Shown here piece by piece: positions 8,050-57,889 of a DNA stretch of 64,000 nt (positions are counted from its first letter, which is position 1; each line of letters starts with the position of its first letter). Source of the stretch: Macrostomum lignano. Lineage: Eukaryota. The DNA lies in assembly GCA_002269645.1 (NCBI GenBank), contig NIVC01000221.1:496001-560000 (forward strand), in the 5' to 3' direction. A model generated the notes under the pieces. It was given only the letters and a program-made list of their open reading frames with translations. It was not told where the DNA came from and made no database searches. The position numbers were made by a program, and so were the translations under genes.

Positions 8050-8150
8050 CCAAACCCACTTAACCTCACAGCTTCATCCAGACTCACTCAGCCTCCACAG
8101 CTACATCCAGATCCTCTCAGTCTCACAGCTACATCCAGACCCACTCAGCC
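8050..8150 (-). repeat. Short array (3-4 units) of the 28-bp stop-codon minisatellite
   Basis: Degenerate CACAGCT(T/A)CATCCAGA(C/T)CC units directly downstream of the gene B stop. Confidence 0.85.
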
Positions 8151-10416: not shown

Positions 10417-13400
10417 CAGGGAATCCTAAAGACCTGGAAGTGACACTGCAATATTCAGGCCCTCCAGGCCGGTCCAACCCAGGCCGATAACTTTTTTGGG
10501 AGAGAGGACAAAGAGGAAAAACATTTTCTTGCAGGGGCTAGTAAAGCGACTCGAAAAAGGGAGGAACGAAGGATAGAGAAGGGGTTGAGTGGACTGAGAG
10601 GATAGAGAGTGCAGAGAAAATCACTGTCCAAATAAAGACTGATTCAATATGAAAGGAGCGCATTGTACATGAGTGTACGAATTCTAAACATGATGACGCA
10701 CTGTTGAATGCACACATAACTCTTATGCCCCTATCGAGCTGCATTTAAGTAAGCTTTCGTGTGTTCATAATCAAACTGAATATCCTCTCATTTGCAAGCA
10801 TCATAATGGGTTACAAGTGCTGTGTATTTGGCTGCAAATCTGGCTACGCGTCGCAGAAGACAGAAAATGTGAGCTATTATGCTTTTCCTAAAGACACCAA
10901 CTTGCGACAGCGCTGGCTTCGCGCCATTCCAAATGCTGATTTAAATGCTTCCGAATTTCAACGCGTCTGCTCGAAGCATTTCACTGAATCAGATTTCGTG
11001 AAGAGTTCATCGGATGCGAATCAACGCCGGAAGAAACGACGCTTTTCTGCATCTGATTCAAAGCTGCATCTGATTCGACTCAAAGACGATGCAGTTCCAT
11101 CTCAATTTGAAGGCTTGCCGAAATACCTGAGCAAGCCAATTACGCAGGTAAGAAGTCAAAATGCCACTTCCGCTGCGCGCTTCATGGGAGACCAAGTCCG
11201 CTTAGATGAGGAAATCAGCGACTTTTTTGGCTCCGACGAGTTGTGCGATTTCAGCGATTTGATTCAAAAGCTGGAACAAGCGACGATTCCCTCTGGATTC
11301 GTCAGAAGTAAGGAAGCAGATTCAGTCTCGTTTTACTTGATAACAAGATCTGACTCGATTTCAGCTCCTTGTCTGCTTGCCTCTATGACAGTACTGCAGG
11401 ACCTTACCTTCCAAGTCTTCATCTCTGGCCTTTCTTGCTCTGATAGCATGTTTAAACACCTGCTCAAAGATGACTCGCTACATGTGCGTCAGCTTTCGAC
11501 TTTAGAAAACATGTTAGCCTTGATTAAGTCTTCGGCTACTGTTGCTGTTGACTCTCGCAATTCAAATGTGTCGTCTGCATTTGTTGAAGGCGTTTTAAAA
11601 GTCTACCTCGAATCTTTGAGTGATGATTCTGAACTGAGCAGCAATGTCAATTTCTTAGCTGAACAGTTCTCACTGATTCATCAAAAAGTATCTGCTCGAC
11701 GATATTCACCATCAACAACTGTGTTTGCGTACTTGATCTTTTCGACAAGTCGTGCCGCCTATAAGGCAATCCTAGAAAATGGTGCCCTCTGCCTACCATC
11801 TGTAAGAAGCCTTGTCAGGCTAAATGCTGTTCTTTCGAAGGAGCCTGGAGTGGTTGAGGAAATGTACCTGCAGTTGAGGACAGAGTCACTGTCTAGCAGA
11901 GAGAAGCACGTTGTGCTCATTATTGATGAGGTCGCAACAGCTAAAAGAATCGAGTTCAATTGCGACTCTGCTTACGGCCTTGCGAGTGACGGTAAAATGA
12001 CCTCCTCAATTCTTGCCTTTCTAATCAAGTCCGTCGGCGCATCCTATCAGGATGTTGTCGGTCTATTTCCTGTTAACTGCTTGACCGCTCTGGACTTATG
12101 CAACATGGCCAAGGAAGTGATTGCGGCTGTCACAAAGAGTGGATTTGAAATTGTTGCATTGTCCTGTGACAACTCCTCTGTCAACCGAAAGTTTTACTCA
12201 ATGTCAGCTGTACCTGAACATGGGCTGTCTATGCGACATCCATGTGACGATCAGAAAGAAATCTTCTTGCTGATGGACACTACTCACAACATTAAAAATG
12301 TGTATAACAACTTTCAGAGACGAGGTGTATTTCACTGTCCAGCGTTCGACAATTGCAGCAACTTTGTGGCAAGGTTCAGTGATGTTGAGGCTATTTTTGA
12401 AATTGAAAGAGGTCAGTCGTCAAAGATTGCCTTCCGTCTGTCGGAGAAGGTTTTACGTCCTCTTAATGTCGAGAGAACTAGTGCTTCACTGGCTGCAGCT
12501 GTGTTCGATGACACAACAGTTTCTGCACTCAGACTGTATTCAAGCACAAAGAGCACGGAGGTAGACACTTCAACGTTCAATAGCACAGCCAATTTCTTGT
12601 CCATGATCAGGAAGCTGTGGGCAATATTGAATGTTCGAACGCCATTCGCCGGTCAACAATTAAGAAGACCGGAAAGTGAGCCGCTAACTAATATGCAAGA
12701 CTGGCAGCTCCAGTACCTTGCTGACTTTGTTGGCTTCCTAAAGAAGTGGCGAGCGGTATCAACAGGCGCAGATGGTCTGACAAACGAGACATTTGGCAGC
12801 CTCATTCAAACATGCTCAGCCATTCCACTATTGTGTGCGAAACTTTTTTCTACTGGCCACTTTGACTACATTCTGCTGGGAAAGTTGTTGTCCGATCCTC
12901 TTGAAAGGCAGTTCGGAAAGTACAGGCAGATGTCCGGCGGATTGTATTTTATCAGTGCAAAGCAGGTCGTTCAGTCCGAGAATAAACTTAGAATGACTTC
13001 ATTGCTTAAGCACTCGGAAATAGACTTGCTACGCTTAAAGAAGTCTTTCATGAAGGATGTTGAGCAGGAAGACACTGACGTTAGTCTAAGAGCAGCAGAA
13101 ATCTTCGCTGATGTGTCAGATGAGCCATGCATGACCTTGCGCAGTAACGAGATGGGCTGTTTGAACGTGATGTTCTACATAGCAGGTTACCTTTCAAAGT
13201 CCATCAGCAAGGGATGTGCTGATTGTAGAGAATTTTTGGTGAGCGAAGACAAGGTCCCTCCAATGGAAGTGACTCTCGACGATGCTCCTAATCGTGATTT
13301 CCTAGTTCGACAGTCATCACGGGGAGGACTGTGCTGTCCATCGGATTCTGCTTTCGTTCTCTGCATGACAGCGTTCAATTCGTTTGAGCTCATCAAGGGC

Positions 13401-14112
13401 TCCAAGCAGCTGCTGCAGAAGCTTCTTAGCTTTAAACCGCATCAAACATTCGCATCAGTCGTGATAGTAAAAACTCAAAACTGTGCAAAATTTTCGGCTC
13501 GTCGCTTCCGCTGCTCAAATCATTCACTTAGACAAGTCATTCGGCAGTTTTCTTTCCGACTCCTAAACTGTTTTCTGAAAAACCTTTCTTCTGAAGCTAA
13601 CCGCCCATCCGTTGTAGGCAAACGGAAATCGGGAGAACAGAAGAGAACTGAGGACTGCTCTCGCAAACTGGCCAAATTGAATCCTTAGTACTCGTAATAG
13701 TATATTTTTATAAGCTTCATTGTTTTGACGATTCCGAGTTACTGCTAATTATTTTATTTACGAGTAAGCTCCCAGTTTATCCTGATGCATAATTACTGCC
13801 TTTCTGATGTCCGATGATCCTTCAACCCTGGTAAGTTTGATTAAAACCCTTTTTATGTTTATATAGCCTATGGTTTACCAGTTTTATGCATAATTGTTTC
13901 TTATAAAAGGCCTCATGAAACTTTCGTTTATTTCGTTACAATAAGGACTTTAAAAAATTCAGGGGATATGACTTTTCAGCGCTGTATCATCGAGTTGATA
14001 CTGAAAACCCTATAGAAAATGGCATGGGCTGCCTTGTTTGGTTAGGTAGGATCGGCCTGAGTTGGACCGCCCCCATTGGACAGTGTCACTTCCAGGTCTT
14101 TAGGATTCCCTG
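10417..14112 (+). mobile_element. Complete P-superfamily DNA transposon
   Basis: 32-bp perfect TIR CAGGGAATCCTAAAGACCTGGAAGTGACACTG at both ends, further subterminal match GGTCCAAC.CAGGCCGAT; 7-bp TSD GACAGAC (10410-10416, 14113-14119). Confidence 0.93.
10806..13688 (+). CDS. THAP-domain P-element-type transposase (960 aa, uninterrupted)
   Basis: THAP: MGYKCCVFGC...FPKD...RWL...VCSKHF...AVPSQF; core LIIDE, SCDNSSVN, DTTHNIKNVYNNF, SDPLERQFGKYRQMSG; C-terminal CxxC. Confidence 0.93.
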   Translation: MGYKCCVFGCKSGYASQKTENVSYYAFPKDTNLRQRWLRAIPNADLNASEFQRVCSKHFTESDFVKSSSDANQRRKKRRFSASDSKLHLIRLKDDAVPSQFEGLPKYLSKPITQVRSQNATSAARFMGDQVRLDEEISDFFGSDELCDFSDLIQKLEQATIPSGFVRSKEADSVSFYLITRSDSISAPCLLASMTVLQDLTFQVFISGLSCSDSMFKHLLKDDSLHVRQLSTLENMLALIKSSATVAVDSRNSNVSSAFVEGVLKVYLESLSDDSELSSNVNFLAEQFSLIHQKVSARRYSPSTTVFAYLIFSTSRAAYKAILENGALCLPSVRSLVRLNAVLSKEPGVVEEMYLQLRTESLSSREKHVVLIIDEVATAKRIEFNCDSAYGLASDGKMTSSILAFLIKSVGASYQDVVGLFPVNCLTALDLCNMAKEVIAAVTKSGFEIVALSCDNSSVNRKFYSMSAVPEHGLSMRHPCDDQKEIFLLMDTTHNIKNVYNNFQRRGVFHCPAFDNCSNFVARFSDVEAIFEIERGQSSKIAFRLSEKVLRPLNVERTSASLAAAVFDDTTVSALRLYSSTKSTEVDTSTFNSTANFLSMIRKLWAILNVRTPFAGQQLRRPESEPLTNMQDWQLQYLADFVGFLKKWRAVSTGADGLTNETFGSLIQTCSAIPLLCAKLFSTGHFDYILLGKLLSDPLERQFGKYRQMSGGLYFISAKQVVQSENKLRMTSLLKHSEIDLLRLKKSFMKDVEQEDTDVSLRAAEIFADVSDEPCMTLRSNEMGCLNVMFYIAGYLSKSISKGCADCREFLVSEDKVPPMEVTLDDAPNRDFLVRQSSRGGLCCPSDSAFVLCMTAFNSFELIKGSKQLLQKLLSFKPHQTFASVVIVKTQNCAKFSARRFRCSNHSLRQVIRQFSFRLLNCFLKNLSSEANRPSVVGKRKSGEQKRTEDCSRKLAKLNP

Positions 14113-16691: not shown

Positions 16692-18238
16692 GGCTGAGGG
16701 CAGCCAGCAGCTGCCAGAATGGAATCAATTGCAATAACTAGCCAATTAGAACTCTGGGAATGTTGAACGAAGGCTGGTGGAATGGGTCTGAAGCATCCAT
16801 TCGTTATTTAATTGGAACTCAATGAAGCCAGAATCTATCTGGTGTCTTTACTGGTGTACTTTTACTGTCTTGTTTTCCGTTCTTAAGCCTGTCAGTCTAT
16901 CCTACTCACGAGACAGATGCTTATGAGTTTGAACTCAGAGTTGAGTACCAAGTTTCTTCGTTTAATCTGTTCGCTGTAGTTTACTTTGTCTTTTTAACAA
17001 CTTGATACTTGCAGCGTTGCGCTTGTTTTGATATAAACAGATCCACAATTAAAATGTTTTGTTTTAATTATCAACCAATATGAACTGCATTTATGGGCGA
17101 TTCTTACAGGAAACAAATTGCTCAATGAGTAGTCTCGGTGCGTGCCAGCCCTAGACTCCAATCATGGACAAGTCATCCATGATTCATACATGAACCCATC
17201 CATGTATCATCCCTGCTCATGTATGGCCCCATCCGTGATCATGTATGGTTCCATGTTGAATTCATGCATGGAAAGATGCCATCCATGTCCATGTATGAAA
17301 CTAAAAAGCGGTCAATATTCCTCATGACACTACTTTTGCAAGTAGAAATTACAACATGTGCTTAGAGCGCTATATATATTCCTAATTGTTGTCCTTGATC
17401 ATTCGTAATTATCATTATTCTTTAAAGAAGCTCTAAAAGAAACAAAAGCAAATCCAATGGAAATCATTTCATAGCAACGAAAGTGTGTTATATAGGTAAA
17501 TTTTATAGCCTTTATAGAAATGGGAAAACGACATGTATTTGAGAAAAATAAAATAAAAACTATTAAAAGAGAACATAAAAAAATGCACACAAAAAATTAA
17601 ACAGTTGATAGAAATGACAGCGAAACATAGGAGTCTTTTAGCATAAAAGACTGTGAAAAATGTAACGGAGCAATCAACGACAAAAAAGTGCTGACACACG
17701 AAAAGCATATGCATTGGAGTACAAATTTTCACTGGATAGAGCACATGTACATAAGACATGACGTAATTAAAAATAGACAATGAATAGAAATTAGAAGCAA
17801 GCATTGGAGCACAAAAGGAACAATATGAAAATGTACACAAAAAATTAACTGCAAAAACGTATGCTCGCATGAAACACAATGGGGGGCATGGAACGCACAT
17901 GTGTAGCTTTTGCAGGCATCGAACATAAAGCCCTAAATAATGGCGCATGATAAATTGAAAGTTGAACAAATATGAATGCACACGGATAAAATGACACATT
18001 TGGCGCACTTTTATCAAACAAATTCAAAGATTTACAAGTCAATTTTTCGCTATTGCTAACTGCCACTCTTGGCAACCAGATATTATGTCACATTCTGCAT
18101 TTGATAAAAAGCCGACCCGGGAATGCGCCACAAACTTTTTGACATTGATGTAGGTAATTTTTCGCCGAAATTAGCGGATAGCTGCTTTTAAAGCACGCCA
18201 AGCATATGTCAACTCGTAGTAAACAAAATAATTGCTTC

Positions 18239-20533
18239 CTAATCATGCTCAAATGATTTGCACAGGGGAATAGCACAAAAGCAATCCTTACTATAGGACG
18301 CTACGGGAACAGCAATGCAAGGACGGTCGATATCCGCCAGATTGACAAACTTTTCCGGGGACAATCGCTGTGCAGTCGACAAAATAACTAGAACATAATT
18401 AAATGACGAGCACCTCTTAAACATTGCGCTAAGCATCTGTTGCCACTCTACTAAATCCTCAGGCCATGATGTGCTAGAAGAAATGTAGTCAAAAAGCGAG
18501 ACGATTGGTTCCAGAATTTGAACGCGCACATGATTCGGTAATTTAAATTCAAGGATTGAGCAAATTTCGCCAGACTTCAAAATGCAAAGATGATTTGAGC
18601 TGGTAGATTTGCCAGCAGAGAGTACACTGGAAAACAAATATCCATGGACATAGGCTTCAGAGCTTCGAAGAATGCCCTCTGATCGCATTGGCTATCTGAT
18701 CGAATTGAAGGCTTCTAGAACCGCAGGATCCTGGGCTTGACTAAAATAATGAAATAGCTCCTTTTGCCACAAAAACTTCAATACTAGCTGGGAGCCAAAC
18801 GATGAAGTTCCACACAAAAATTTCTTAAACATTCCAATTGCGCTTTCAAAAGCAAACATGGAATAAAAAGACACAGGACCAAGCAATTCATACTGATCAG
18901 CAATGTGCAAAAGCAAGTGAAAGTTTAGACGCAAAATTCTCGGACCGAAGACTTTCTGAGCATTGCCAACAAACGACTCAGCCAATTTTTCAATGTCGGA
19001 CTTATTCGACCATGGGTTATATAGCATGTGATAAAGAAGCACCAAATTAGTAAGTAGCAGCTTCAGAGGCAAATGCGTTACTCGCTGCACTAAGGTAGGA
19101 AAAAGAAAATACAAAGCAAAACTTTTAAAATGCTTGGCCTTCCAATCCGAAAAGCTTCCAAAATTAGAATTAACGAAAACACTGGATGGGATGACAGAAT
19201 TGCGTATACAAGCTGCGACAAATGCCAGACAACTTGTTGAGCAAAAATATTGCTCATGTCTATTCGCCGAGGATGTCAATTCTTCTAAAAGGTATTTTAT
19301 ATGACCTTCAAAAAAGCAATGTAAGCTGTCGATGGCATAGCAGTTCGGAAAAGAAATGTAGTTCAACAAACAACTGCGTGCTTTTACACCGAAAACAGGC
19401 TTGTTGCGAATGTTAGCAAGTTGACAATGCTCATTGTGAGTAGCTGCTGTTCGCAGAGGAAAAATGTGGTTCTTGTCAAATCGGAAAACCCAATTTGATC
19501 CCTTTTGAGACACTTTTATACTCTCGCCAGGATGGAGACACTTCGGACAACTAAATGCCCCATTGAACTGACGAATGCAAAAGAGCTTAGCAAGAGCTGG
19601 TAAATCACACACAAATAGTGTGCAATGGACGTACACACAATAGTCCAAAAAATCAAACTGCTTCGGCAAGCGATTCATTAAATCGGACAAAAAATATTGA
19701 AAGTTAGGAACGGCCCTGGAGGAAACAAGGGCTATGAGAATTAGATTGGCAAAGCGTTGACGAATGTGCCCTGGGAGATTCAGAATTTGGGCTTGAAATG
19801 GTCAAAAACTGCTCTGAATGCTTTCGAAAAAGTTGGCACCATCAGCAGATATGAGAAGATGCAAGTGGAGTTCTTTGCCTGAGGATAGCTTTAAATTTTG
19901 CTTGTTCACAATTTCAGAATTCAGGACATCACTGTTTCTACTCATTCGTAACTCCTGCTCATACTGGAGAATTGTTCCAATGTACCTAGTCAAGATGACC
20001 CGGAGCTGAGGAACAATGTCTAGAAGAGTCACGGTAGCTTTTGCCTTTAGAGGATGAACATCACATTTGCCTTTGCATTCACTGCAAACAGAAATCTCGG
20101 AAACACAGCTGTCATTAATAGAACAAACATTGTTTAGTCTCGACTTAAGCACTTTAGCGCTGGTTGGAAATGTGTGGGGCCCTGCACCCCGAAGAAGAAC
20201 AGAAGCAAGCTTTAATAGCCTATCGAGAGCTGCCTCAGAAACCCCCGATGTAATGGCCCATTGGTAGATTAGAGCGGCTTGTACATCAGGATCAGAAATG
20301 GTTGATAGACTAGACAGATTTTTAATGTCCTCATCATCTGGCACTAAATCATCAGAGCAAGCAGTAGCAGCAGTGCTAGTCCGCTTCAGATCGATTTCAA
20401 TGCTAGGTGCATTTGCATTCGCACTGATATTGCTCAATGATGAAATATCAGAAGGCGAACTAATGGACTCGCATAAGTGCGCCGAATAGTCAGTTGAGAG
20501 AGAAGGCTCGCTTTCATTTTCAGACTCTACCAT
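18239..20533 (-). pseudogene. CMC/EnSpm transposase, one frame interrupted by two nonsense codons
   Basis: ORFs 19802-20533, 18692-19690 and 18239-18688 share a frame; TGA at 19802-19804 replaces W in S.WP..I.NLP; TAG at 18692-18694; motifs ISADG, CDLPA, NG..SC..C, DSLH, HLLLH...GP...SMFAFES. Confidence 0.88.
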
Positions 20534-31356: not shown

Positions 31357-31698
31357 GTCGGTATTCCTGTCCGAACTGTTGATCGAAATAACTCAGAATT
31401 ATCAAATTCGGTGAGGTGGGACTCGGTATTGAAGGGCTAGTGTTGAAGAGGATCCAAGCCGAACTCGACTGAACAAAGACGTGATTAGACTGAGGACAGG
31501 TGAGACGGTTATGGGAACTCAAATACGCGGGTATCGCAGACTCACCAGTTTAGTCGTAAATTTTTATTTGTGAAATAATTATCGTCACTGGCCCAGTAGG
31601 AGAGGCTGCCACCACTTTAACTTATCCAGTTGAAAACGGTTGAAAACGGTAGGTGACCAATAGCGGATAAATAAAGCTTAAGATCAACATTTATGGCG

Positions 31699-31741
31699 AA
31701 AACCAACGCGTTTCAACCCACTAGGGCCGTCGTCAGGGTAT
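31699..31741 (-). ncRNA. Minimal type I hammerhead ribozyme (inverted copy)
   Basis: Reverse complement of the 31912-31954 motif. Confidence 0.7.
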
Positions 31742-31911
31742 ATTTTATCACTGAACGAAACACTCAATATAAATAAGCAAACGATTGTACTATCTCAAGT
31801 GTCAAATTGAAAACGGGAGGGTAACCAATGTACGAAAAACATAAAAAACTAGGGGTTGGAGTTAAGTGAGAATAATGAGAGAGAGAGAGAGAGAAGGCAA
31901 ACAGATGTAAA

Positions 31912-31954
31912 ATACCCTGACGACGGCCCTAGTGGGTTGAAACGCGTTGGTTTT
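31912..31954 (+). ncRNA. Minimal type I hammerhead ribozyme
   Basis: ACC-CTGACGA-C-GGCCC-TAGT-GGGTT-GAAAC-GC-GT-T-GGT: core CUGANGA/GAAA, stem II, palindromic ACGCGT stem III, GUU site, stem I ACC/GGT. Confidence 0.7.
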
Positions 31955-32769
31955 CGCCATAAATGTTGATCTTAAGCTTTATTTATTTGCTATTAATTAA
32001 GCGAGCAACTCTACCACAAGACCAATAGCGGACTCTTGAAAGCTGCTGAATGCATCATGCGCTTTGGACAGCTGAAGCAGCTGATGGACGCTGGAGGCTG
32101 GTGCCGCTGTCTCTTGGTGGGGCACCGCTGTCTCTTGTCTCTTGTTTTACCCTGTCTTTCAGGCCATTGGATGCCAGATCTCAAAAGAGGAGGAAAACTG
32201 AGCTCCTGTCATTTATCGAGCTACTGGTTACCTCTTTCATTAAGTTAGTTTTTGGAGGAGCAAACATTTTTTCATGGGGCTCCTCGCTAGCGGAATGGGC
32301 GACGCTCGCCTCCCCGCTGCGTCTTCGGACCGCCCTGCAGCTGGGGCTCCTCGCACCTGTGTCTATACGCCACTTCAGCCAGTAAGTTGTATGTTTATTG
32401 TAGCAAAACACAACCGTATCGAGGATAAGCGAGTGGTGCGTCACTTCCCACTAATTCCCAGTCATTGAATTTGTCAGTCAAACTGATCGCCATTGAGAGA
32501 GAGATCCTTGAGAACCCTGAAGTTGTTCTGCATATTCACGGAAAGTCTACAGTATGAGCTATTTGACGGACAATTGTGTCATTAGAAAGCAGAAAAACGG
32601 TTGAATTATTTCTTAAGAGACCTGTGTCAACAAACTCAAAAGCCTAGTGATTGATGGGGCAGCAGTTGAGTCTGTTTAATATATTTAATACACTGCGTCC
32701 CGAAGGAATTTTCGTTAGGAAGCTCTGAAAAGGAGGCGTTGTACCATCCTATTTCTGTACGCTTAGACC

Positions 32770-33530
32770 ATGTCGCCAACAGTGCTGATTTTGACTGCTT
32801 TTACCGGCTGCGTTTCGGCGATGCTGACGCCCCAACTGCTGGGAGTTCGCTACCTTGGTTGCTATGCGGACGGAGATAACAGCAACCGAGACATGAGCGA
32901 ACTGCAAGGCATCGCCAGCTTTGGAACTTACAAAATCGATGTCCTGAACTTGGCCTTCGTAGTTAACGCAGAGATGACGCTAGAAATGTGCGCTCAAATC
33001 TGCGCCATCGGTCGATTTCAATTCTTCGGTGCCCAGCGAAGCAACTACTGCTGCTGCGGCTCAGCCTACGGCAGACTCGGTAGAGCGGCGGAGAGCGACT
33101 GCTCAACGGCTTGCGCAGGAAACTCGTCTCAGAAGTGCGGAGGAATGGGCAAAAACTCTGTCTATGAAATATTCTACTCTCACGGTATGCAAACCGAAGT
33201 CTTGATGTTCTATAATTTAAAGGCTAATTTGTGACGCAAAGTTATTGAAATGAATATTTATTCCTCTACGATTACCCACTAACAGTCAAGGACACCATGA
33301 CGCAGCTGCAGGTCGCAGCGATTCCCAGCATCTCAAGCTTTCCGAATTCAACAACTCACCGCAGTGCTGCTGCCAGAAGCCCTACCAAGTGCGCCATCAA
33401 CTGCCAAACCAGCCTGGACTGTCAGGGCTGCGCCTTTGAGACTTCGAGCCGCATGTGCCGCCTGCTGAGATTCGTCGGTGTGCCCGCCGAGGTGGCCAGC
33501 GAGGCTGAGTGGGTCTGGATGAAGCTGTGA
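32770..33530 (+). CDS. Secreted WSC + PAN/apple-like protein (gene D); exons 32770-33184 and 33286-33530
   Basis: MSPTVLILTAFTGCVSA signal; YLGCYAD, MCAQIC, NYCCCG, KCGG..KNSVY; phase-1 intron 33185-33285 (GTATGC...CTAACAG); ends EAEWVWMKL*. Confidence 0.9.
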
Positions 33531-34062
33531 GGCTGAGAGGGTTTGGATGAAGCTGAGGCTGAGTGGTCTGGATGAAGCTGTGAGGCTGAGTGGGTCTGGA
33601 TGAAGCTGTGAGGCTGAGTGGGTCGGGATGAAGCTGTGATGCTAAGTGGGTCTGGGTGAAGCTGTGAGGCTGAGTGGGTCTGGATGAAGCTGTGATGCTA
33701 AGTGGGTCTGGGTGAAGCTGTGAGGCTGAGTGGGTCTGGATGAAGCTGTGATGCTAAGTGGGTCTGGGTGAAGCTGTGAGGCTGAGTGGGTCTGGCTGGA
33801 TGAAGCTGAGGCTGAGTGGGTCTGGGTGAAGCTGTGAGGCTGAGTGGGTCTGGCTGGATGAAGCTGAGGCTGAGTGGGTCTGGCTGGATGAAGCTGAGGC
33901 TGAGTGGGTCTGGATGAAGCTGTGAGGCTGAGTGGGTCTGGATGGATGAAGCTGAGGCTGAGTGGGTCTGGCTGGATGAAGCTGAGGCTGAGTGGTTCTG
34001 GATGAAGCTGTGAGGTTGAGTGGGTCTTGATGAAGCTGTGAAGCTGGGTAGGTGTGGATGAA
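33501..34062 (+). repeat. 28-bp stop-codon minisatellite, about 19 units, the first overlapping the CDS
   Basis: GAGGCTGAGTGGGTCTGGATGAAGCTGT units with 26- to 32-bp variants. Confidence 0.95.
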
Positions 34063-34619: not shown

Positions 34620-35120
34620 CGTTATTAGAAAAGGACCTGTCCAAAGTGGCATTTGGGTTGGAAAATGTGGTTCGCTTCCTGTTCAAGTACAGTTGGAACT
34701 TTTATTGCGCTCTCCGTGATAAATTTGAATATGGAAATCTCTGATAAAGTCTTAATACTTTGGTCGCGCAAGAAATTTTTACAGGGCAGCCAATAACACA
34801 CCACAAAAATGCTGGTAGAGTCGCTCGCTTGGCGAGAAGAATAAATAGAAAGCTTATTATCAACATTTGAATATGATTGCAATTTCTAACAACTTCAACG
34901 CGTTTCGCACGCCATGGTGCATCGTCAGGATTTTATTAGAACGATTTGAGAAATTGAGATTGAAAGCGATTGATTAAATATTGGTTTTGCAACGTACACA
35001 GGTAAGGAGGGTAAGATTGAAAACAATTGATTACAACTTGGCTTTAACAACATACTATTAATTTAATGAAATTGCAATCATATTCAAATGTTGATATTAA
35101 GCTTTCTATTTATTCTTCAC
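34620..35120 (-). mobile_element. Penelope-like remnant with an inverted tail repeat of about 50 bp
   Basis: 34836-34886 inverted at about 35067-35117; tail AAATGTTGAT..TAAGCTTT resembles the 31.9-kb element; contains a hammerhead. Confidence 0.5.
34891..34934 (-). ncRNA. Minimal hammerhead ribozyme
   Basis: Minus strand ATC-CTGACGA-T-GCAC-CATGGC-GTGC-GAAAC-GC-GT-T-GA; G-C-closed stem II, weak stem I. Confidence 0.65.
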
Positions 35121-35777
35121 ACCACAAAAAGCAAAGTAACACATTGATGATATTTTATGAGGGCGAAATTCTTGAGAAGTGTCAGCAGTTGAAATCAGAA
35201 AGCCACCATTCCCTCCCTGATACCCCAGCTCTCTACAGATCGTATATTGCTCAAGCCAATTAAAAAAACAGTTCTGAACCAAATGCAAACTAATTTAAAG
35301 TTCGTAACAGAAAGACGTGCCGCAAATTAAATTTAAAATGAAACGCCGAAGGAATGATTTTCTAACGTTTTTTCTTTTCTAACGAAAATAAGAAACATAT
35401 CTGAGAGAACTGACCAGAAAAAGAATTATAAACATCAGACCACTGCTTCTGACTTTGTCTCTTACATTTAGTTTGCTTTGGAAAGTGCAATCTTGACTAT
35501 CCCCACTCAGCTTCACAGCTTCATTCAGACAAACTCTGTCTCAAATTTTTTCATTTTCAAGGACATGGGGAGACCGCCTAATGAAGAGTAGCTATGAAAA
35601 AATCTATGAAGGGAACTCTTACAGTTTTTGTAAAAAAGTTTAGCATTTATAAAAAGATACCACTTTGAACATGGGTGCGCCAGCGGGGCCTCAGATCCTT
35701 CAGATCCTGAAGTAGTGGTCTAGATCAGCTGAAATTAATAAGAAAACAGTGACAGAAGCACTTGTATAGTAAGAATC

Positions 35778-36014
<237 letters not shown>

Positions 36015-36349
36015 CGTTGCTGCTGCTCCCGATCCTATAGCTGGCGCGCGCGACACTCAACGTAAATTTCAGAAAAAAAGAATAGCGTCGGGTGCCTGTT
36101 AATTAGCAAAAGCTCTCTCTCTCTCTCAATGCTAATCAACAGCAAGGCCCCCGTGTAGCTTTGGAGATCCGCGTTGTCAGGAAACACACGGAGGGATTCA
36201 AAGGGGTGGGCTAGCACAACCACTTCTAGAAGAAGACTCAGCCAGCTAGTTAGGTAATAATGACAGTAGGCAGAGATGCCCAAAGGATTCTGGGATGCTT
36301 TTGTTTAACAATGTTTAACGAGAGACACTGCACTGCCATTGAAAAGGAT

Positions 36350-48767: not shown

Positions 48768-50133
48768 TTACTCAAACTTACCACTTGAAACTTGCACTTC
48801 ATTAGCCGGCTTGACTTCGACAGGTGAGATACCGTCGACACCTGTCTCAATGCACGGCATGTTTACGCCGTTCGATTGCTTGGGCACCTCGATAGGACGA
48901 TCTAAGGCCGCGCTTACAGCCGTCGACGCTTCAAAAACTGCGCGGTCGCGCTTCCTTGATAGATATCGGCGCACCGTTTTTTCGCTCTTCTGACCGGTGA
49001 TGCACATGATATCATTCATTCCATGGCCAGTCTCGTGCAAGTCCGCGATTCGCGTCACCCGTATACAATGATTTGTATACTCTCGAGATAGATTGCATTG
49101 CTTGCTAAGCCGTTTCATCAATGAGGTGAACCAATCGATGCCTCGTACCTGCTGAGATGAAAAACGCAAACAACCCGTTGTCTTGTCATTCGGTAGTGCT
49201 CTTGGGAACAAGCAGTCGTCCTTGCGATCCGATGGGAGCAGCGAAATGTATTTATTGACCAGGTCCCGCTGCTTCCCATACAGCCTAGCTTGCTTCGGGC
49301 GGTCGTCCTTACAACGCGTAGGATCGGAATTTTGATTCTTCGTAGGCAGTATTGGAAGCGACATATAGGGTCTGCCATCAGCATCCACCTTCGTCAACAG
49401 ACTGCTTGCTGCCTTCAATGCCGGCAGGTGCTCTTGCCCACGCTCTCCAAAAACGTACAAAATGGTGAACAATACCTCATCCTGCAACTTCTCAGCGGTA
49501 CTTCCGTCTGCTCATCAATGCTCGCAACTTTGTTAGATCAGCTTCCTCGATAGCTTCAAATTGCTTGGTAACGCCTCCAGCATTGTGGAATTCCCTCACC
49601 TTCACTCTTAGCATGCGATTGGAGCTCGCAAACTCTTCTCCGTCAATGAAGTTGATAGAGCGCTTCAGAATTAGGTTAAAGTACCGGTGTATCCCAGCTC
49701 TAATGCACACAAGACTTGATGGCGAATACTTTTCACCGTTCGTCCTCTGCAGACCGAAATAATAATAGCGCAAGTACTCATTCAGCTTCCACACTTCCAT
49801 CGTCACAGGCGACTCCTCGGTTGTCTCAGAGAGAAACTTTACGAAAGCCTGCCCATGCCGATTCATCTGGTCCACCGTTGACTTTGGCAGTGACTGAATT
49901 TCTACCCCATCCATTCTCGAACTTAGGTCCATGTCGTCGCCCGCCACCTCCGGAAGTTCGGGCAGTTCATCAGTGCCATGATCGTTCTCAAGCCACTTAA
50001 TGAAATCACTCAGGGCCTGGTCATCGTGATGTTCTCCATGCATGCTTATCTCCGACAAAAGTTGCAGCTCGTCCATCTTGACACCATTGAGCGAGTCGAC
50101 CGGAAGATTTTTCCAATTGATAAGCGCAGGCAT
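48768..50133 (-). pseudogene. Crypton-like tyrosine recombinase, frameshifted near 49510
   Basis: YSPSSL..IRAGI.RYF, LQDEV.F....FGERGQE, YTNHCIR, ITGQKS...RY. Confidence 0.82.
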
Positions 50134-51097: not shown

Positions 51098-54000
51098 CTA
51101 ACCTGCAGATATTGGACACAACTTTGTTATTGGTCTCGTCATTGTGCGATCACCGACTCTGATTGAGGCGACTCTCACGTGCCCGTCAGGACCGCGCATG
51201 ACGTCCAGCACGCGAGCCAGCGGCCAGTGACCCCGAGGCGAGTCCGGGCTCACCAGCAGCGCTACGTCTCCGGGTTGTAAGTCAGGCAGCTCGCGGCGCC
51301 ACTTGCTCCGCGGTGCGAGTCCCGGCAGCCACTCGCGCAACCACCGGCGCCAGATCTGCGACACCAGCTACTGAACGTGACGCCATCTTCTTGAAGGGCT
51401 GCGGGCGATGGCAGCGTCGACCTCCGGTGCAAACATCCCGCCGACTTGCCCGATGAGGAAGTGATTCGGCGTCAGTGGCACATCATCATCAACACTCGGA
51501 TGCGCCGTCTGGTACGTCAGCGGCCTTGAATTCAGAAGTGCCTCCGCTCCAGCAAACGCGCTTAGCAGCTCCTCATCCGTGACATCCGTCTCTCTCAGAA
51601 TTGACTGCCAAAGCTCCTGCATCAGAATCTTCGCCTGCACGACAAACGGGGAGATCAGTCCAAGTGGATCAAAGACACTCGCTAGCTTTGTTAGCAGACT
51701 CCTTCTTGTGGTCACCTGATACGACTCGTTTTCGTCTTTAAAAGTAAATTCGTCCTGCTCACTCTGCCACGTGATACGCAGCGTCTTGGTACTCGGTAGT
51801 TCTTTGCTATCCAAGGTAACTTCTGCTGCGCGGTCCTCAGGTGGGATTCTATCGAGCACAGCTCTCGAGTTCGAGACCCATTTGCGCGCGTGCATGCCGG
51901 CGCGCCTCCAGAGCTCACTGAGTTGATCGTACAGCCTGCAGGCGGCTGCCTCGGTGGGCGCAGAGTCCAGGCTGTCATCCATATAGGTAGAGTGCAGTAC
52001 TATCTCGGCCGCCTCTGGAAGCTCACCTTTTAACTTTTCAGCATGGCAGCGGGTAACGAACTGTGCCAAGAAAGGAGAACTGGTGACGCCGAACACCACT
52101 CTGTTGAACTCGTAGACATTCGGCTGCTTTGAAGGATCGGCGTCCCGCCAAAGGAAACTGTGCAGCGGCCTGTCCTTCGGGTCCATCTCGATCTGGAGAT
52201 ACATTTCCGCTACGTCGCATGCGATCGCAATCGGGTGTCGGCGGAACCGAAGCAGCACGTCAACCAAATCTCTCTGCAGTTTGGGGCCCTGGAGGATCTG
52301 GTCGTTCAATCTGGCAGCCGATGCATCAAAGACTATCCGCACTTTTGTTGTAGCCTTGTCTGGCCGCAGCACTGGGAAGTGCGGCAGGAAACAGCGGCCT
52401 TCAGTCTCAGCTTGCGACACTTTTCGGATATAACCTTGCTGTTCATACTTTTCAAGGATTTCCTGATACTGCTTGCAGACGTGCATATCCTTAATCAGCC
52501 GCTGTTCGGTGTTCTTTAGTCGCTTCAAGGCCATTGAGAAAGTGCCTGCTGGAGCCAGCCGATCCTTTTTCCATGGAATCCCGATCTGGTAACGGCCCTT
52601 ACTTTAGCAACGACTTGGCTTGCTGGACGGCTCTCTCCTCATCAGCGGTCAGCGGACTTCGATTGGCACCTTCTGAGACGTTCTCGATCTCCCAAAACTG
52701 CCGCAGGATCTTAGCCACCTGACCAGATTCGGAATCGCAGCTGAAGAAAGTGGCAGCGAAATGGGCGTTCTGCATCTCAGAATTGTCCTGCTCTGTGCGA
52801 CCGATGCACGTCCAACCCAGGGGAGTCAGGCGCGCCTTTGGCTCCAGCGGCTGTCCGACGATTTCCTTGAGAGACATGTGAAGGTCCGGGTGATCAGCAC
52901 GAATCAGCAAGTCCACTACTGCAGGCTCACACAGCTTCGGAAACGGCACATTTCTCAGATGAGGCCACTGCTGCGCTTCTTCGTGCCAGTCGACGCCTTT
53001 GAGGGACCCGGTCACGTGATCAGCGGTGAAGGCGACGATCATTGAGCTGGTCTGACCATCCAGACTTTCCAAGCTAAAGCAGACTGGGGCTGTCATGAAG
53101 GTCTCTTTTTGGCCATTGATGACTCCGACTTTCACCTTTTCGAGCGCTCCATGCACTCCAAGCGCTTCTGCTATCCCGATGTTGACGTAGCTCCTGGTAC
53201 TGGCATCGTCGAGCAAGGCGTTCACCTTCAGCTTCCGGGACCCGTTCCGTATGACTACAGGCACCGTTCGTAACGAGATTGCCATTTCACCAGCCGACAG
53301 AAGCGTCACCGGTCCAGTCTTTCCTGAACTGGAAGCGGATTTAGCGTCCTTGGATGCAGTCTGCTTCGCTTCACCAGACTTGGCCAACACTTTTTCTGCA
53401 TGAAGCAGGCGATGATGGAACTTTATGCAGCTGTTGATGCCGCACCGACGACCGGTTGCCAAGGCTGCCAAGATGTCCTTGGCCCAAGCACCGGAAACAA
53501 CACTTCGAGCTCTGCGCCACGTCCCAGCGTTTTTCCACCGGAAGCTCCTTGAACTCACTGCAGGACCACAGCTCGTGATCACCTTGACAAACAATGCAAA
53601 TCTTTCGCTGTACCTTCTTGTCACTGTCCGTATAGTAGTAACGAAAGTCTTTGGTCACTGCTCTCGCTTTTGACGCTCCTGCTGCATGGTGGCAACGCCC
53701 TGCACAATCTCTGACGCTTCAGTCTGAAACTCTGCTTCTTGCAGCACCCAAATTCTCAGATTTCTAACACTCTCCGGCTTCCGCTGCTCAAAGATCCACC
53801 TCCGGTAGCTGGCAACCATCTGCTCAAGCAACTTTTTCTGCAGCCTCACATACAACATCCCATCTTGAAGCTCTGCCTCTTTACCCGCGTCCTCAAGGTT
53901 AACGACAGCCACATCAAGTAGATAAGCAAAGCTTTTCAGATCCTTGGCGTTTCCATTTCGCACGATCGGGAAGCTGTCCAGCTCTTCCAAGTGCAGAGCA

Positions 54001-54773
54001 AGTTGCCTACGCTGTCCACCAAATTCTCTCTCTAATCTCTCTTTTGCAGCTTCAAATGCCGCAGCAGAGTGTCCTAGATGTTCTATAACCTTCAAAGCTT
54101 CACCGCTGAGGTACTGCCTAAGCTGCAGCAACTTGAATTCTGGTGTTGCAGGGGCGCTGTCGATGCACGCAACAAAGGCTGCCTTCCAGTTTTCATACTT
54201 CTGCTTTTCTCCACTAAACGTTGGGATTTCAACACGCTTCAGCATCTTCCACAAATCCTTTGAAAGCTCCTTCGGGTTGGATCCTTTGCTGGACGCAGCA
54301 CTGCCAGAAAGTTTGTGTAACTCACCAGCTGCTTCTTCTTGGTCAACCGCAGCGTTCTCACCGCTTGAGCTCGCGGCAGGAGCTTCTTGGGCGCGCAGCA
54401 ATCTCCGGTTTCTGGCGCTTTCGACGCGCTGCGTGGTAGCTTGGTAGTCGCGCTCCGTCTTCTCCATTTCGTCTAGTAGGCGCTGTCGCCTCTCGTTGTC
54501 CTTGGCGTCGGCGTAGCCTTGATGCAGTTCTTCCTGGATGGCGCTGACCAGATCTTGCAGGTCTGACAGAGCGTCACAGGCAACTTGCACTTCGTCATCA
54601 GAGGCGTGCGTCTTTAACAGCCAAGACAGCTTGTTTTTGCAACGAGTGAACGTTGCTTTTTTTCGGGATTTCTTGAAGCGCAGCTTCTCTAAACGTAGGG
54701 CGCCGGCATCGTCTTGGGCTTCCTGCTGTTGTTCATTGGCGTCGGCACTGTCCATCCTGGTCCTTCGTTTCAC
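51098..54773 (-). mobile_element. BEL/Pao retrotransposon internal region (gag, protease, RT, integrase tail), internally deleted
   Basis: Gag IPTFSG...YENWKAAF, zinc knuckles, protease ALLDDAS, RT FLPHFPV, VFDASA, FGVTSSPF, YMDD; LWQS fused to the integrase tail; WPLARV...GPDGHVRV. Confidence 0.93.
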
Positions 54774-57450: not shown

Positions 57451-57889
57451 AAACAAAAACACAAGTCAACATTGAACTCCGTTGTCTGAATAATTTTAAC
57501 ATATTTTATATTTGTAATTTGTTCTGAATGACACAGAGGCTGAAAAAAAATCTGCCGGCAAACGTTACGATTTTTTATATTTTTTTATCAAATCGTGAAA
57601 CAGTGGGTTTTGGTTTTACTCGTAAAGCTTTTAAAAATTAGCCTTCAATTTATTGTCGATGTCAACTGTGACGTTGCCAGTTTAAGGTGGTCCCGAAAAG
57701 GGCCGTTGGACTGCTGTTTCTCCATAGTTTCAACCCTTCAGTTTCACCGTTTCAACTAAACTTTTCCATTTGTTTATTGCGACGTTTACTTGTAGTAGTG
57801 CCCAACGATTTTGTGACAATTTCTAATTCACTGTATATTTTGCTATCCTCTCTCGCGACCGTATAAAATTGGCACGATCGATAATTTTA

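What the first reader, a model, noticed from the sequence alone, without database searches (positions are those of the whole stretch)
31655..32032. TSD-flanked 350-bp mini-element carrying two perfectly inverted hammerhead ribozymes
Two identical 75-bp arms face outward around a 170-bp spacer, and each contains CUGACGA-stem II-GAAAC-GC-GUU. The palindromic ACGCGT stem III is typical of the minimal, dimer-active hammerheads known from Penelope-like elements. A 13-bp TSD implies a retro-type insertion, and identical arms imply it is recent. It encodes no protein and sits between the divergently oriented PAN-fucolectin gene and WSC-PAN gene D. A transcript from either strand carries one ribozyme but can also fold into a 75-bp dsRNA hairpin, giving a possible choice between self-cleavage and small-RNA production.
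Basis: partly seen in the sequence, partly recalled or inferred. Interest (0 to 1): 0.75.

Follow-up and report, generated by a model that had tools for sequence, protein, structure and literature searches.

The report
Truncated Penelope-like retroelement with inverted hammerheads
The 378-bp feature is real, but it is an ordinary by-product of a known retrotransposon class: two truncated 3' ends of a Penelope-like element inserted head-to-head, each with that class's usual minimal hammerhead ribozyme motif, in a flatworm-like genome.

Summary
Two 75-nt, 100% identical inverted arms (31667-31741 / 31912-31986) lie around a 170-nt spacer. A 13-bp direct repeat, GACCAATAGCGGA, flanks the unit. 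Each arm has an outward-facing CUGACGA-N-helix II-GAAA-CGCG-UU motif.

A generic minimal-hammerhead descriptor finds exactly three sites in the 64 kb and none in 300 random windows. The third site is in a second, diverged element at 34797-35130. That element also has a 13-bp duplication, compensatory changes in helices I and II, and the same asymmetric anatomy.

In each element one copy ends with an extra 27-33-nt "tail" and the inverted partner lacks it. This matches the published insertion signature of Penelope-like elements (PLEs): 5' truncation, an adjacent inverted copy, a one-sided tail, a short duplication, and a minimal dimer-type hammerhead with an unpaired base after A9.

The same ribozyme variant sits upstream of an RT/GIY-YIG ORF in a metagenomic PLE (L141).

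Negatives: Rfam hammerhead models do not score the motif, and no autonomous partner or empty site could be retrieved.

At this locus the ribozyme is predicted to be buried in a ~75-bp hairpin.

Verdict: a new member of a known kind, of low to moderate interest.

The parts
31655..31667 (.). Element 1, left copy of the 13-bp target-site duplication GACCAATAGCGGA
   Evidence: Exact direct repeat with 32020-32032 (D6).
31668..31824 (-). Element 1, left PLE copy. It is sense on the - strand, and its 3' end at 31668 lacks the tail. It holds the 3' region, the hammerhead and upstream pLTR-like sequence. The inner end is approximate.
   Evidence: It is the inverted partner of the right copy. A k-mer chain is colinear with the long copy of element 2 up to about 31824. 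nhmmer family profile E=6e-20.
31705..31736 (-). Element 1, left minimal hammerhead core (C3 at 31736 to U17 at 31705). The predicted cleavage site is between 31705 and 31704.
   Evidence: Generic min-HHR descriptor hit: one unpaired base after A9, helix II of 5 bp, palindromic helix III, helix I 4/6.
31825..31894 (.). Element 1, junction or filler between the two copies, of unknown origin. It includes a (GA)9 microsatellite at 31876-31894. Boundaries are approximate.
   Evidence: No match to element 2 or to the other arm. The GA run is visible (D3).
31895..32019 (+). Element 1, right PLE copy. It is sense on the + strand, is 5'-truncated just upstream of the hammerhead, and ends with the tail.
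   Evidence: Arm identity. Alignment to element 2. nhmmer E=4e-32.
31917..31948 (+). Element 1, right minimal hammerhead core: CUGACGA, unpaired C, helix II GGCCC/GGGUU, GAAA, CGCG, U, U17. The predicted cleavage site is between 31948 and 31949.
   Evidence: The homodimer is predicted to form through the 8-nt palindrome AACGCGUU.
31963..32019 (+). 19-codon ORF start, MLILSFIYLLLIKRATLPQ, running to the element's 3' end. It is probably the N-terminus of the parent PLE ORF.
   Evidence: Same frame, same ATG position, no indel and no stop in element 2 (MLIISFLFILLAKRATLPA). Of the 10 codons that differ, 4 are synonymous-only and most of the other 6 are conservative hydrophobic changes.
31987..32019 (+). 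Element 1 'tail': a 33-nt 3' extension present on the right copy only.
   Evidence: The left copy stops at the equivalent of 31986. The tail core AAGCGAGCRACTCTACCA is shared with element 2.
32020..32032 (.). Element 1, right copy of the 13-bp target-site duplication
   Evidence: D6.
34797..34809 (.). Element 2, left copy of the 13-bp target-site duplication CACACCACAAAAA
   Evidence: Read; identical 13-mer at 35118-35130.
34810..35067 (-). Element 2, long PLE copy (sense on the - strand). It has a 27-nt tail (34810-34836), an ORF start (34866 down to 34810), a hammerhead, and upstream pLTR-like sequence containing a 57-nt internal duplication.
   Evidence: nhmmer E=2e-39.
34897..34928 (-). 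Element 2 minimal hammerhead core: CUGACGA, unpaired U, helix II GCAC/GUGC with G10.1-C11.1, GAAA, CGCG, U, U17.
   Evidence: Helix II and helix I position 1.2/2.2 covary with element 1.
35068..35117 (+). Element 2, short inverted copy: 50 nt of the 3' region, without tail and without hammerhead.
   Evidence: Inverted repeat I1; 1 mismatch in 47 nt by eye; nhmmer E=4e-9.
35118..35130 (.). Element 2, right copy of the 13-bp target-site duplication

Best explanation
Element 1 (31655-32032) is a dead-on-arrival insertion made by the reverse transcriptase/GIY-YIG endonuclease of a Penelope-like element (PLE).

Inferred mechanism:
1. The enzyme nicked both target strands 13 nt apart, leaving 3' overhangs.
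2. Each 3'-OH primed reverse transcription on PLE RNA, in a way resembling twin priming.
3. The bottom strand started at the distal start site. This gave the right copy, which carries the 33-nt tail.
4. The top strand started about 33 nt further in. This gave the left copy, which has no tail. That junction shows 7/9 microhomology between the target end and the template.
5. Both cDNAs stopped early (5' truncation at about 125 and 157 nt or more). They were joined through about 70 nt of filler.
6. Repair of the overhangs produced the 13-bp duplication.

The hammerhead is not a device of this locus. It is the minimal, dimer-type type-I hammerhead that PLEs carry in their pseudo-LTR next to the ORF start, copied twice because both cDNAs covered that segment.

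Shown here: the anatomy, the motif and its covariation, the second element, and the same motif in a real PLE.

Inferred: the priming scenario and the origin of the filler.

Predicted only: any RNA from this locus folds into a ~75-bp hairpin that hides the ribozyme, so self-cleavage here is unlikely.
For: Anatomy in the window
- Arms, spacer and duplication are confirmed.
- A second, roughly 72%-identical element lies at 34797-35130. It also has a 13-bp duplication, one long copy with a hammerhead and tail, and a short inverted tail-less copy.
- In both elements the extra 3' segment (33 nt and 27 nt, ending ...ACTCTACCA+3 nt) is on one copy only.

Match to the published PLE insertion signature
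- High 5' truncation, an adjacent inverted 5'-truncated copy, and a 30-40-bp tail at one end (PMC8557442).
- A 31-bp tail on one of the inverted pLTRs, 8-10-bp duplications, and a pLTR that contains the first codons of the ORF (PMC3846280).
- A purified PLE protein nicks and extends both strands and starts reverse transcription at two adjacent internal sites that define the tail (PMC11167929).

The hammerhead
- The generic descriptor hits exactly 3 sites and 0 in 300 random windows.
- There is an unpaired base after A9, helix III is palindromic and helix I is short. These are the non-descriptor features listed for PLE min-HHRs (PMC4209133).
- That paper also reports pairs of min-HHRs 100-700 bp apart on opposite strands in Schistosoma.
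- Helix II changes from GGCCC/GGGUU to GCAC/GUGC, and helix I pair 1.2:2.2 from G:C to A:U, between the two elements.

Outside relatives
- A metagenome scan with the 19-nt core gave 81 loci. Fifteen distinct sequences, including the window's three, have helix II of at least 4 bp. All 15 have the unpaired base, and 13 of 15 have G10.1-C11.1.
- In that set helix I, which was not used for selection, pairs better than in the chance-like set (3.5 vs 2.1 of 5 positions, p=2e-4).
- L141 is a tandem 5.8-kb unit with this hammerhead upstream of ORFs that carry YIDD-type RT motifs and a GIY-YIG domain.
- L139 has two outward-facing copies in a 187-nt inverted repeat, the same layout as element 1.

ORF start
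- A conserved 19-codon ORF start runs to the 3' end of both elements.
Against: - No PLE reverse transcriptase or GIY-YIG ORF of 110 aa or more is present in the window.
- No protein starting with the 19-aa peptide was found. Note that the query was far below the length at which the search is sensitive.
- No Rfam hammerhead model scores the motif, even at E<=10 on 66-nt slices.
- Element 1's helix II closes with G.U, and its unpaired base is C, whereas the 12 outside examples have U or A. Its ribozyme may therefore be impaired.
- No empty site or further genomic copies could be examined, because the source genome is not in any searchable collection.
- The origin of the ~70-nt filler is unknown.
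- Which copy owns the spacer rests on short k-mer chains.
Confidence: 0.8

Rival explanations
1. Elements 1 and 2 are copies of a short, defined non-autonomous element derived from a PLE pseudo-LTR. It would be SINE-like or a solo 'non-LTR retrozyme' monomer, mobilised in trans by PLE enzymes, rather than random 5' truncations of a coding PLE.
For: - Both insertions are small (352 and 308 nt between the duplications), and neither reaches coding sequence beyond 19 codons.
- No autonomous partner was found in the window or by peptide search.
- Animal retrozymes are argued to be non-autonomous PLE pLTR derivatives, and solo monomers are common (bioRxiv 10.64898/2026.07.22.740005).
- pLTRs alone suffice for trans-mobilisation in Adineta vaga (PMC3846280).
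Against: - The internal junctions differ. The inverted copy is at least 157 nt in element 1 and 50 nt in element 2. The filler is present only in element 1.
- There is no head-to-tail tandem.
- The 3' 57 nt keep an open, indel-free frame with synonymous and conservative changes between two ~72%-identical copies. This suggests descent from coding masters. With 19 codons this is only suggestive.
Confidence: 0.15
2. It is a miniature inverted-repeat DNA transposon (MITE). The arms would be terminal inverted repeats recognised by a transposase, and the hammerhead-like motif would be incidental.
For: - Inverted arms flanked by a direct duplication are the formal hallmark of class II elements.
- An apparently intact THAP/P-element-type transposase ORF lies in the same window at 10761-13688.
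Against: - The termini are not symmetric. One end carries 27-33 nt that the other lacks, in both elements.
- By general knowledge, a 13-bp duplication is longer than those of the described TIR superfamilies (P elements give 8 bp).
- The arms contain a full hammerhead core with covarying helices, plus an ORF start shared with nothing transposase-like.
- The same motif sits in an RT/GIY-YIG retroelement.
Confidence: 0.03
3. The locus is a functional host hairpin-RNA or regulatory module between two divergent lectin-like genes, exapted from a PLE. Its RNA would be either self-cleaved or diced into small RNAs.
For: - It lies about 300 bp upstream of the ATG of the PAN/F5-8C gene and about 740 bp upstream of the WSC gene.
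- Either strand is predicted to form a ~75-bp perfect hairpin (-160 / -156 kcal/mol).
- PLE pLTRs have promoter motifs readable in both directions, and inverted PLE structures yield small RNAs in a rotifer (PMC3846280).
Against: - There are no expression, small-RNA or conservation data.
- The perfect identity of the arms indicates youth rather than selection.
- Single min-HHRs are inactive as monomers and weak even as dimers in vitro (PMC4209133).
- The opposite arm is antisense, so it cannot supply the second ribozyme. It competes with it instead.
Confidence: 0.05

Closest known systems
Minimal hammerhead ribozymes of metazoan Penelope-like elements (Cervera & de la Pena 2014, PMC4209133)
   Same: - Type-I topology with an open, short helix I.
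- CUGANGA and GAAA boxes.
- One unpaired nucleotide between A9 and 10.1.
- Helix II of 4-6 bp.
- No hairpin helix III; instead a short palindrome (ACGCGU) that can only pair in a dimer.
- Pairs on opposite strands 100-700 bp apart are reported in the flatworm Schistosoma.
   Different: - Element 1 has G10.1.U11.1 instead of G-C, and C as the unpaired base.
- The cleavage triplet is GUU.
- This sequence family and host (Macrostomum-like) are not described in the papers I could search.
PLE insertions with inverted pseudo-LTRs and a one-sided 30-40-bp tail (Arkhipova et al. 2013 PMC3846280; Craig et al. 2021 PMC8557442; Frangieh et al. 2024 PMC11167929)
   Same: - Head-to-head inverted 5'-truncated copy.
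- Tail on one end only (33 and 27 nt here).
- Short target duplication.
- A 3' module that includes the first codons of the ORF.
- Two reverse-transcription start sites, and extension from both target strands.
   Different: - Both copies here are truncated before any coding body, so nothing but the pLTR/ORF-start module is left.
- The duplication is 13 bp (8-10 bp in the rotifer examples).
- The tail-less junctions show microhomology to the target, whereas the in vitro study reports no homology.
Metazoan non-LTR retrozymes (Cervera & de la Pena 2020 PMC7229834; Li et al. 2026 preprint)
   Same: - Small non-coding retroelements with type-I hammerheads.
- Duplications longer than 4 bp.
- Related to PLE pLTRs.
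- Solo monomers occur.
   Different: - Retrozymes are head-to-tail tandem repeats with canonical hammerheads that give circular RNAs.
- Here there is no tandem, the motif is the minimal variant, and the two copies are inverted.
L1 twin-priming inversions (Ostertag & Kazazian 2001; from general knowledge)
   Same: Both 3'-OH ends of a staggered break prime reverse transcription. This gives an inverted 5' segment joined to a direct 3' segment inside one target duplication.
   Different: - In L1 the second primer anneals internally, so the two segments do not overlap.
- Here both cDNAs start at the 3' module, so the product is an inverted repeat.

Membership tests
PLE-type minimal hammerhead (min-HHR) | Catalytic boxes C3-U-G-A-N-G-A9 and G12-A-A14, followed by A15.1 ... 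U16.1-H17 | tested here: met
   All three copies have CUGACGA ... GAAA-CGCG-U-U.
PLE-type minimal hammerhead (min-HHR) | One unpaired nucleotide between A9 and 10.1 | tested here: met
   It is C in element 1 and U in element 2. The descriptor fits only with a bulge of 1. The same holds in all 12 outside examples.
PLE-type minimal hammerhead (min-HHR) | Helix II closed by a conserved G10.1-C11.1 pair | tested here: inconclusive
   Element 2 has G-C. Element 1 (both arms) has G.U and a second G.U next to it. It is still paired but departs from the consensus.
PLE-type minimal hammerhead (min-HHR) | Helices I and II supported by compensatory change | tested here: met
   - Helix II changes from GGCCC/GGGUU to GCAC/GUGC, and helix I pair 1.2:2.2 from G:C to A:U, between the elements.
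- Across 15 sequences helix I pairs at 3.5 of 5 positions, against 2.1 in chance matches (p=2e-4).
- There are only two independent window sequences.
PLE-type minimal hammerhead (min-HHR) | No helix III hairpin; palindromic 15.x-16.x able to pair only between two copies | tested here: met
   ACGCGU lies within the 8-nt palindrome AACGCGUU. The cofold dimer is -32.3 against 2 x -11.8 kcal/mol.
PLE-type minimal hammerhead (min-HHR) | Mg2+-dependent self-cleavage 3' of H17 | not testable with these tools
   This needs in vitro transcription of monomer and dimer constructs.
Rfam hammerhead families (Hammerhead_1, _3, _II, HH9, HH10) | Covariance-model score at or near the gathering threshold | tested here: not met
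   No hammerhead hit at gathering threshold on the whole window. None at E<=10 on 481-nt or 64-66-nt slices.
Penelope-like element insertion | ORF with PLE reverse transcriptase and GIY-YIG endonuclease | tested here: not met
   - None among ORFs of 110 aa or more in the window.
- The partner search by N-terminal peptide found nothing.
- These copies are truncated derivatives, not complete members.
Penelope-like element insertion | Hammerhead-bearing pLTR module next to the ORF start | tested here: met
   - The hammerhead lies 14 nt upstream of a conserved 19-codon ORF start in both elements.
- The same motif lies upstream of an RT/GIY-YIG ORF in L141.
Penelope-like element insertion | Adjacent inverted 5'-truncated copy | tested here: met
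   Found in both elements.
Penelope-like element insertion | Optional 30-40-bp tail at one end only | tested here: met
   33 nt (31987-32019) and 27 nt (34810-34836), each on one copy only, with a shared sequence.
Penelope-like element insertion | Short target-site duplication, single in the empty site | tested here: inconclusive
   13-bp duplications flank both elements. No empty site could be retrieved.
Metazoan non-LTR retrozyme | Head-to-tail tandem repeats of a 170-400-nt unit, each with a canonical type-I hammerhead | tested here: not met
   No tandem direct repeat of the unit. The motif is the minimal variant.
MITE / TIR DNA transposon | Symmetric terminal inverted repeats abutting the duplication on both sides | tested here: not met
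   One terminus carries 27-33 nt that are absent from the other, in both elements.

The most novel reading that the evidence does not exclude
The head-to-head hammerhead unit is not a dead end. It would be a PLE-derived 'retro-hairpin' that is transcribed from its bidirectional pLTR promoter between two lectin-like genes and feeds a small-RNA pathway. Alternatively, it would itself be a propagating inverted-repeat non-autonomous element. In either case the target/template microhomology seen at both tail-less junctions would reveal a homology-guided choice of the internal reverse-transcription start site in vivo.
Probability: 0.07. Interest if true: 0.6.

Novelty: new member of a known kind. 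Interest (0 to 1): 0.25.

Why it matters
It matters mainly for annotation. Such units look like MITEs or hairpin-RNA genes, and Rfam misses them, so they are easily mislabelled. The tail asymmetry plus the minimal-hammerhead descriptor gives a quick way to call them PLE debris.

The two elements add in vivo examples, from a flatworm-like genome, of three PLE features: priming from both strands, two reverse-transcription start sites about 30 nt apart, and a fixed 13-nt stagger. These fit the recent in vitro model.

The partial homology between the target end and the template at both tail-less junctions is a small, testable addition to that model.

There is no evidence that the ribozymes act at this locus.

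Tried and rejected
- Rfam. I searched at gathering threshold on the whole window, and at E<=10 on 481-, 66- and 64-nt slices. There was no hammerhead family, only noise such as CRISPR-DR, snoRNA and mir hits.
- Empty site inside the window. The flanks have no paralogous copy.
- Fetching the source or orthologous locus.
  - The closest proteins are from Macrostomum lignano at 76-87% identity.
  - Neither they nor the window's flanking ORFs are on record in the contig index.
- Autonomous partner by N-terminal peptide.
  - A 54-column alignment built from the window ORF found one word-sharing candidate and nothing at E<=10.
  - This test is weak, because 19 informative residues cannot reach significance in 5.8 billion sequences.
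- Viral-contig scans. The hammerhead core gave 53 loci, all chance-like. Most have helix II of 0-3 bp; L032 and L034 reach 7 and 5 bp. The generic descriptor finds 0 hits in 573 kb. I used these as a negative control. The 3'-region pattern gave 12 loci, which I did not examine further.
- PLE ORF beside each outside hammerhead. Most are solo copies. Only L141, and the L068/L103 family, showed coding PLE context.
- Deciding which element 1 copy owns the spacer by local alignment. The same AT-rich segment aligns to element 2 in both orientations, so this was ambiguous. A k-mer chain favours the left copy.
- Testing whether the flanks are older copies of the family. Only one 23-nt match was found.
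- I considered building a covariance model from the outside hammerheads and dropped it. They were retrieved with the window's own 19-nt core, so a hit would be circular.
Full report
1. WHAT IS IN THE SEQUENCE

- The repeat finder reports inverted arms at 31659-31749 and 31904-31994 (91 nt, 95%). It also reports a 13-nt exact direct repeat, GACCAATAGCGGA, at 31655-31667 and 32020-32032.
- A pairwise alignment shows the arms are 100% identical over 75 nt (31667-31741 against 31912-31986), which leaves a 170-nt spacer.
- Each arm contains CTGACGA-C-GGCCC-TAGT-GGGTT-GAAA-CGCG-TT. It sits on the + strand in the right arm (31917-31948) and on the - strand in the left arm (31705-31736). The two motifs therefore point outward.

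2. IS THE HAMMERHEAD MORE THAN CHANCE?

- The family-specific pattern CTGANGA-N8-30-GAAACGCGT has 3 hits in the window and none in 100 shuffles.
- A loose pattern without helices is not specific: 11 hits against 5.3 expected.
- I therefore wrote a generic minimal-hammerhead descriptor following Cervera & de la Pena 2014. It requires both catalytic boxes, an optional unpaired base after A9, helix II of at least 4 bp, A15.1 plus a palindrome of 0-6 nt plus U16.1-H17, and at least 4 of 6 pairs in helix I.
- It returns exactly three sites in 64 kb and none in 300 first-order Markov windows. It also returns none in 573 kb of viral-contig control loci.
- All three sites need the unpaired base.
- Rfam does not recognise the motif. 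There was no hammerhead hit at gathering threshold. There was none at E<=10 on 481 nt or on 64-66-nt slices. I record this as a failed membership test for the Rfam families. It is consistent with the 2014 authors needing a dedicated structure descriptor, since these variants have no helix III hairpin.

3. A SECOND ELEMENT

blastn of the element against the window found a diverged relative 2.8 kb away. Element 2 has these parts:
- A 13-bp duplication, CACACCACAAAAA (34797-34809 / 35118-35130).
- A long copy on the - strand (34810 to about 35067). It holds one hammerhead: CUGACGA-U-GCAC-CAUGGC-GUGC-GAAA-CGCG-UU (34897-34928).
- A 50-nt inverted copy of the 3' region (35068-35117).

The two elements are about 70% identical where alignable. 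The catalytic boxes and the palindrome are invariant. Helix II is rebuilt (GGCCC/GGGUU against GCAC/GUGC), and helix I pair 1.2:2.2 changes from G:C to A:U.

A profile of the shared 3' module finds only these four arms in the window.

4. THE ASYMMETRY THAT IDENTIFIES THE MECHANISM

In each element one copy runs 27-33 nt further than its inverted partner before it meets the duplication.
- In element 1 the right copy ends ...TTTATTTAT-TTGCTATTAATTAAGCGAGCAACTCTACCACAA|GACC, whereas the left copy stops at ...TTTATTTA(T).
- In element 2 the long copy ends ...TTATTCTT-CTCGCCAAGCGAGCGACTCTACCAGCA|TTTTT, whereas the short copy stops at ...TTATTCTT.

The extended ends fall at the same template position in both elements. 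The short ends differ by 6 nt.

This matches the 'tail' described as shared by and unique to PLEs:
- Craig et al. 2021 describe high 5' truncation, an inverted 5'-truncated copy adjacent to the unit, and a 30-40-bp tail often at one end only.
- Arkhipova et al. 2013 describe a 31-bp tail on one of two inverted pLTRs, 8-10-bp duplications, pLTRs that contain the first 12-22 codons of the ORF, and non-coding sequence captured between solo pLTRs inside duplications.
- Frangieh et al. 2024 show that a purified PLE protein nicks and extends both target strands. It initiates reverse transcription at two adjacent internal sites whose spacing is the tail.

From the orientation of the copies, the + strand 3'-OH at 31667 primed the left copy and the - strand 3'-OH at 32020 primed the right copy. 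This corresponds to a 13-nt 3'-overhang stagger filled on both sides. That step is inferred.

At both tail-less junctions the target end resembles the template just 3' of the start site: AATAGCGGA against AATAGCAAA, and TGGTGTG against TGGCGAG. This is read directly. There are only two cases, so it is only a lead.

5. ORF START

From an ATG 14 nt downstream of the cleavage site, both elements keep an open, indel-free 19-codon frame to their very end.
- Element 1 reads MLILSFIYLLLIKRATLPQ and element 2 reads MLIISFLFILLAKRATLPA.
- Of the 10 codons that differ, 4 are synonymous-only and most of the other 6 are conservative hydrophobic replacements.
- By contrast, the segment between the hammerhead and the ATG has a 16-nt indel.
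- This fits a pLTR-ORF junction of coding parent elements. With 19 codons it is only suggestive.

6. RELATIVES ELSEWHERE

Viral contigs. Scanning with the hammerhead core gave 53 loci that look like coding-sequence coincidences. Helix II is 0-3 bp in nearly all of them.

Metagenome contigs. Scanning with the 19-base core CCTGACGA-N12-20-GAAACGCGTTG gave 81 loci, which fall into two groups.
- One group is bacterial-looking and has no helix II.
- The other is the HHR-like set: 15 distinct sequences, 12 from metagenome contigs plus the window's three. Several of the metagenome ones carry identifiers that I believe belong to host-associated samples; I did not check the sample descriptions.
- In this set helix II is 4-6 bp and covaries freely. 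The unpaired base after A9 is always present. 10.1-11.1 is G-C in 13 of 15; the two exceptions are the arms of element 1.
- Helix I, which was not used for selection, pairs better than in the chance group (3.5 against 2.1 of 5 positions, Mann-Whitney p=2e-4).

Individual loci.
- L141 is a 5,931-nt contig whose ends overlap by 136 nt, which implies a tandem unit of 5,795 nt. It carries this hammerhead about 170 nt upstream of a 605-aa ORF. A 758-aa ORF follows, with FYILPKIHK, LDVESLY and YIDD motifs and a GIY-YIG domain (Pfam E=2.7e-5).
- L068 has a homologous RT ORF (E=4e-32 to L141) followed by the motif. L103 has the motif followed by an ORF.
- L139 has a 187-nt inverted repeat with a 4-nt gap and an outward-facing hammerhead in each arm, which is the same layout as element 1.
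- The 2014 paper already notes min-HHR pairs 100-700 bp apart on opposite strands in Schistosoma.

7. FOLDING

- The isolated motifs fold weakly as monomers (-11.8 and -13.3 kcal/mol).
- They are predicted to dimerise through the 8-nt palindrome AACGCGUU (-32.3 and -30.1 kcal/mol).
- The whole element 1 RNA from either strand folds into a perfect hairpin of about 75 bp (-160 and -156 kcal/mol) that contains the ribozyme.
- The other arm is antisense, so it cannot be the dimer partner.
- Published assays found single min-HHRs inactive and dimers only weakly active, and the anole PLE ribozyme needed its protein. Together with the folding, this makes self-cleavage at this locus unlikely. This is a prediction, not a measurement.

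8. CONTEXT AND HOST

- The window is metazoan. It holds a THAP/P-element-type transposase, BEL/Pao fragments, and WSC, PAN and F5/8-type-C exons.
- The left neighbour's first exon is 76-87% identical to Macrostomum lignano proteins. The source is therefore a Macrostomum-like flatworm or a diverged paralogue.
- Element 1 lies about 300 bp upstream of that gene's ATG and about 740 bp upstream of the WSC gene's ATG.
- No PLE ORF is in the window.
- The source genome could not be reached, and the peptide search for a partner was empty. Copy number, the empty site and the autonomous parent therefore remain untested.

9. VERDICT

- The best explanation (confidence 0.8) is a head-to-head pair of 5'-truncated PLE 3' modules made by dual-strand target-primed reverse transcription.
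- The main rival (0.15) is that the template belonged to a short non-autonomous PLE-derived lineage.
- A MITE (0.03) is contradicted by the asymmetric ends.
- A functional hairpin or regulatory role (0.05) has no support beyond position and predicted fold.
- This is a new member of a known kind. It is useful for annotation and as an in vivo illustration of the PLE tail model, but it would not surprise a specialist.

Noticed in passing
window 34797-35130: A second, diverged PLE-type insertion. It has a 13-bp duplication (CACACCACAAAAA), one hammerhead on the - strand, a 27-nt tail on the left, and a 50-nt inverted tail-less copy on the right. It lies 2.8 kb from element 1, on the other side of the WSC gene's first exons.
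   Followed up: yes
window 31639-31661 vs 31806-31828: The left flank plus the first 7 nt of the duplication (TTGAAAACGGTA-GGTGACCAAT) matches an internal segment of element 1 (TTGAAAACGGGAGGGTAACCAAT) at 19 of 23 aligned positions with one 1-nt gap, in direct orientation (score reached in 1 of 500 shuffles). Element 2 also contains ATTGAAAAC and GGAGGGTAA. This could mean insertion into an old relic of the same family, homology-assisted targeting, or a template switch onto target DNA. It is unexplained.
   Followed up: partly
window 31659-31667 and 35118-35124: At both tail-less junctions the target end partly matches the template just beyond the start of reverse transcription (AATAGCGGA vs AATAGCAAA; TGGTGTG vs TGGCGAG). 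The in vitro PLE study reports no such homology.
   Followed up: partly
window 10761-13688 (+): An uninterrupted 975-aa ORF with THAP, TNP-like RNase H and GTP-binding insertion domains. It is a P-element-type transposase that looks intact.
   Followed up: no
window 51368-54773 (-): Three adjacent ORFs with DUF1759, reverse transcriptase and Pao-type peptidase A17 domains. This is a BEL/Pao LTR retrotransposon body broken into several frames.
   Followed up: no
window 48768-50133 (-) and 56948-57502 (-): ORFs with weak, below-threshold matches to the tyrosine-recombinase (Phage_integrase) family. They may be DIRS- or Crypton-like fragments.
   Followed up: no
window 17469-20533 (-): A run of four ORFs with weak DUF4218 and DUF1258 matches. 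It is probably a decayed DNA-transposon transposase.
   Followed up: no
window 35700-36060: A long trinucleotide microsatellite that reads as poly-V, poly-S or poly-L in different frames. A stretch of strong negative GC skew (-0.44) follows at 36-38 kb.
   Followed up: no
window 33500-34050, 74-494, 8055-8180, 35502-35549: A short (~28-nt) repeat unit is shared by arrays downstream of the WSC exons, at the start of the window and near 8.1 kb. One copy lies just right of element 2.
   Followed up: no
L141 (Ga0224499_10001624), whole contig: An apparently complete tandem PLE unit of 5,795 nt in a metagenome contig. Reading along the - strand it has a hammerhead, a 605-aa ORF, then a 758-aa RT/GIY-YIG ORF, plus a 117-nt tandem array at 5377-5708.
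   Followed up: partly
L139 (Ga0268261_10086515) 1040-1417: A 187-nt, 97% inverted repeat with a 4-nt gap and an outward-facing minimal hammerhead in each arm. It is an independent example of the element 1 layout, from another metagenome contig (source organism not determined).
   Followed up: partly
L032 (IMGVR_UViG_3300036818_000161) 5579-5623 (-): This is one of only two viral-contig matches (with L034) whose insert forms a helix II of at least 4 bp with an unpaired base after A9; here it is 7 bp. It may be a real hammerhead, or a eukaryotic fragment filed as viral.
   Followed up: no
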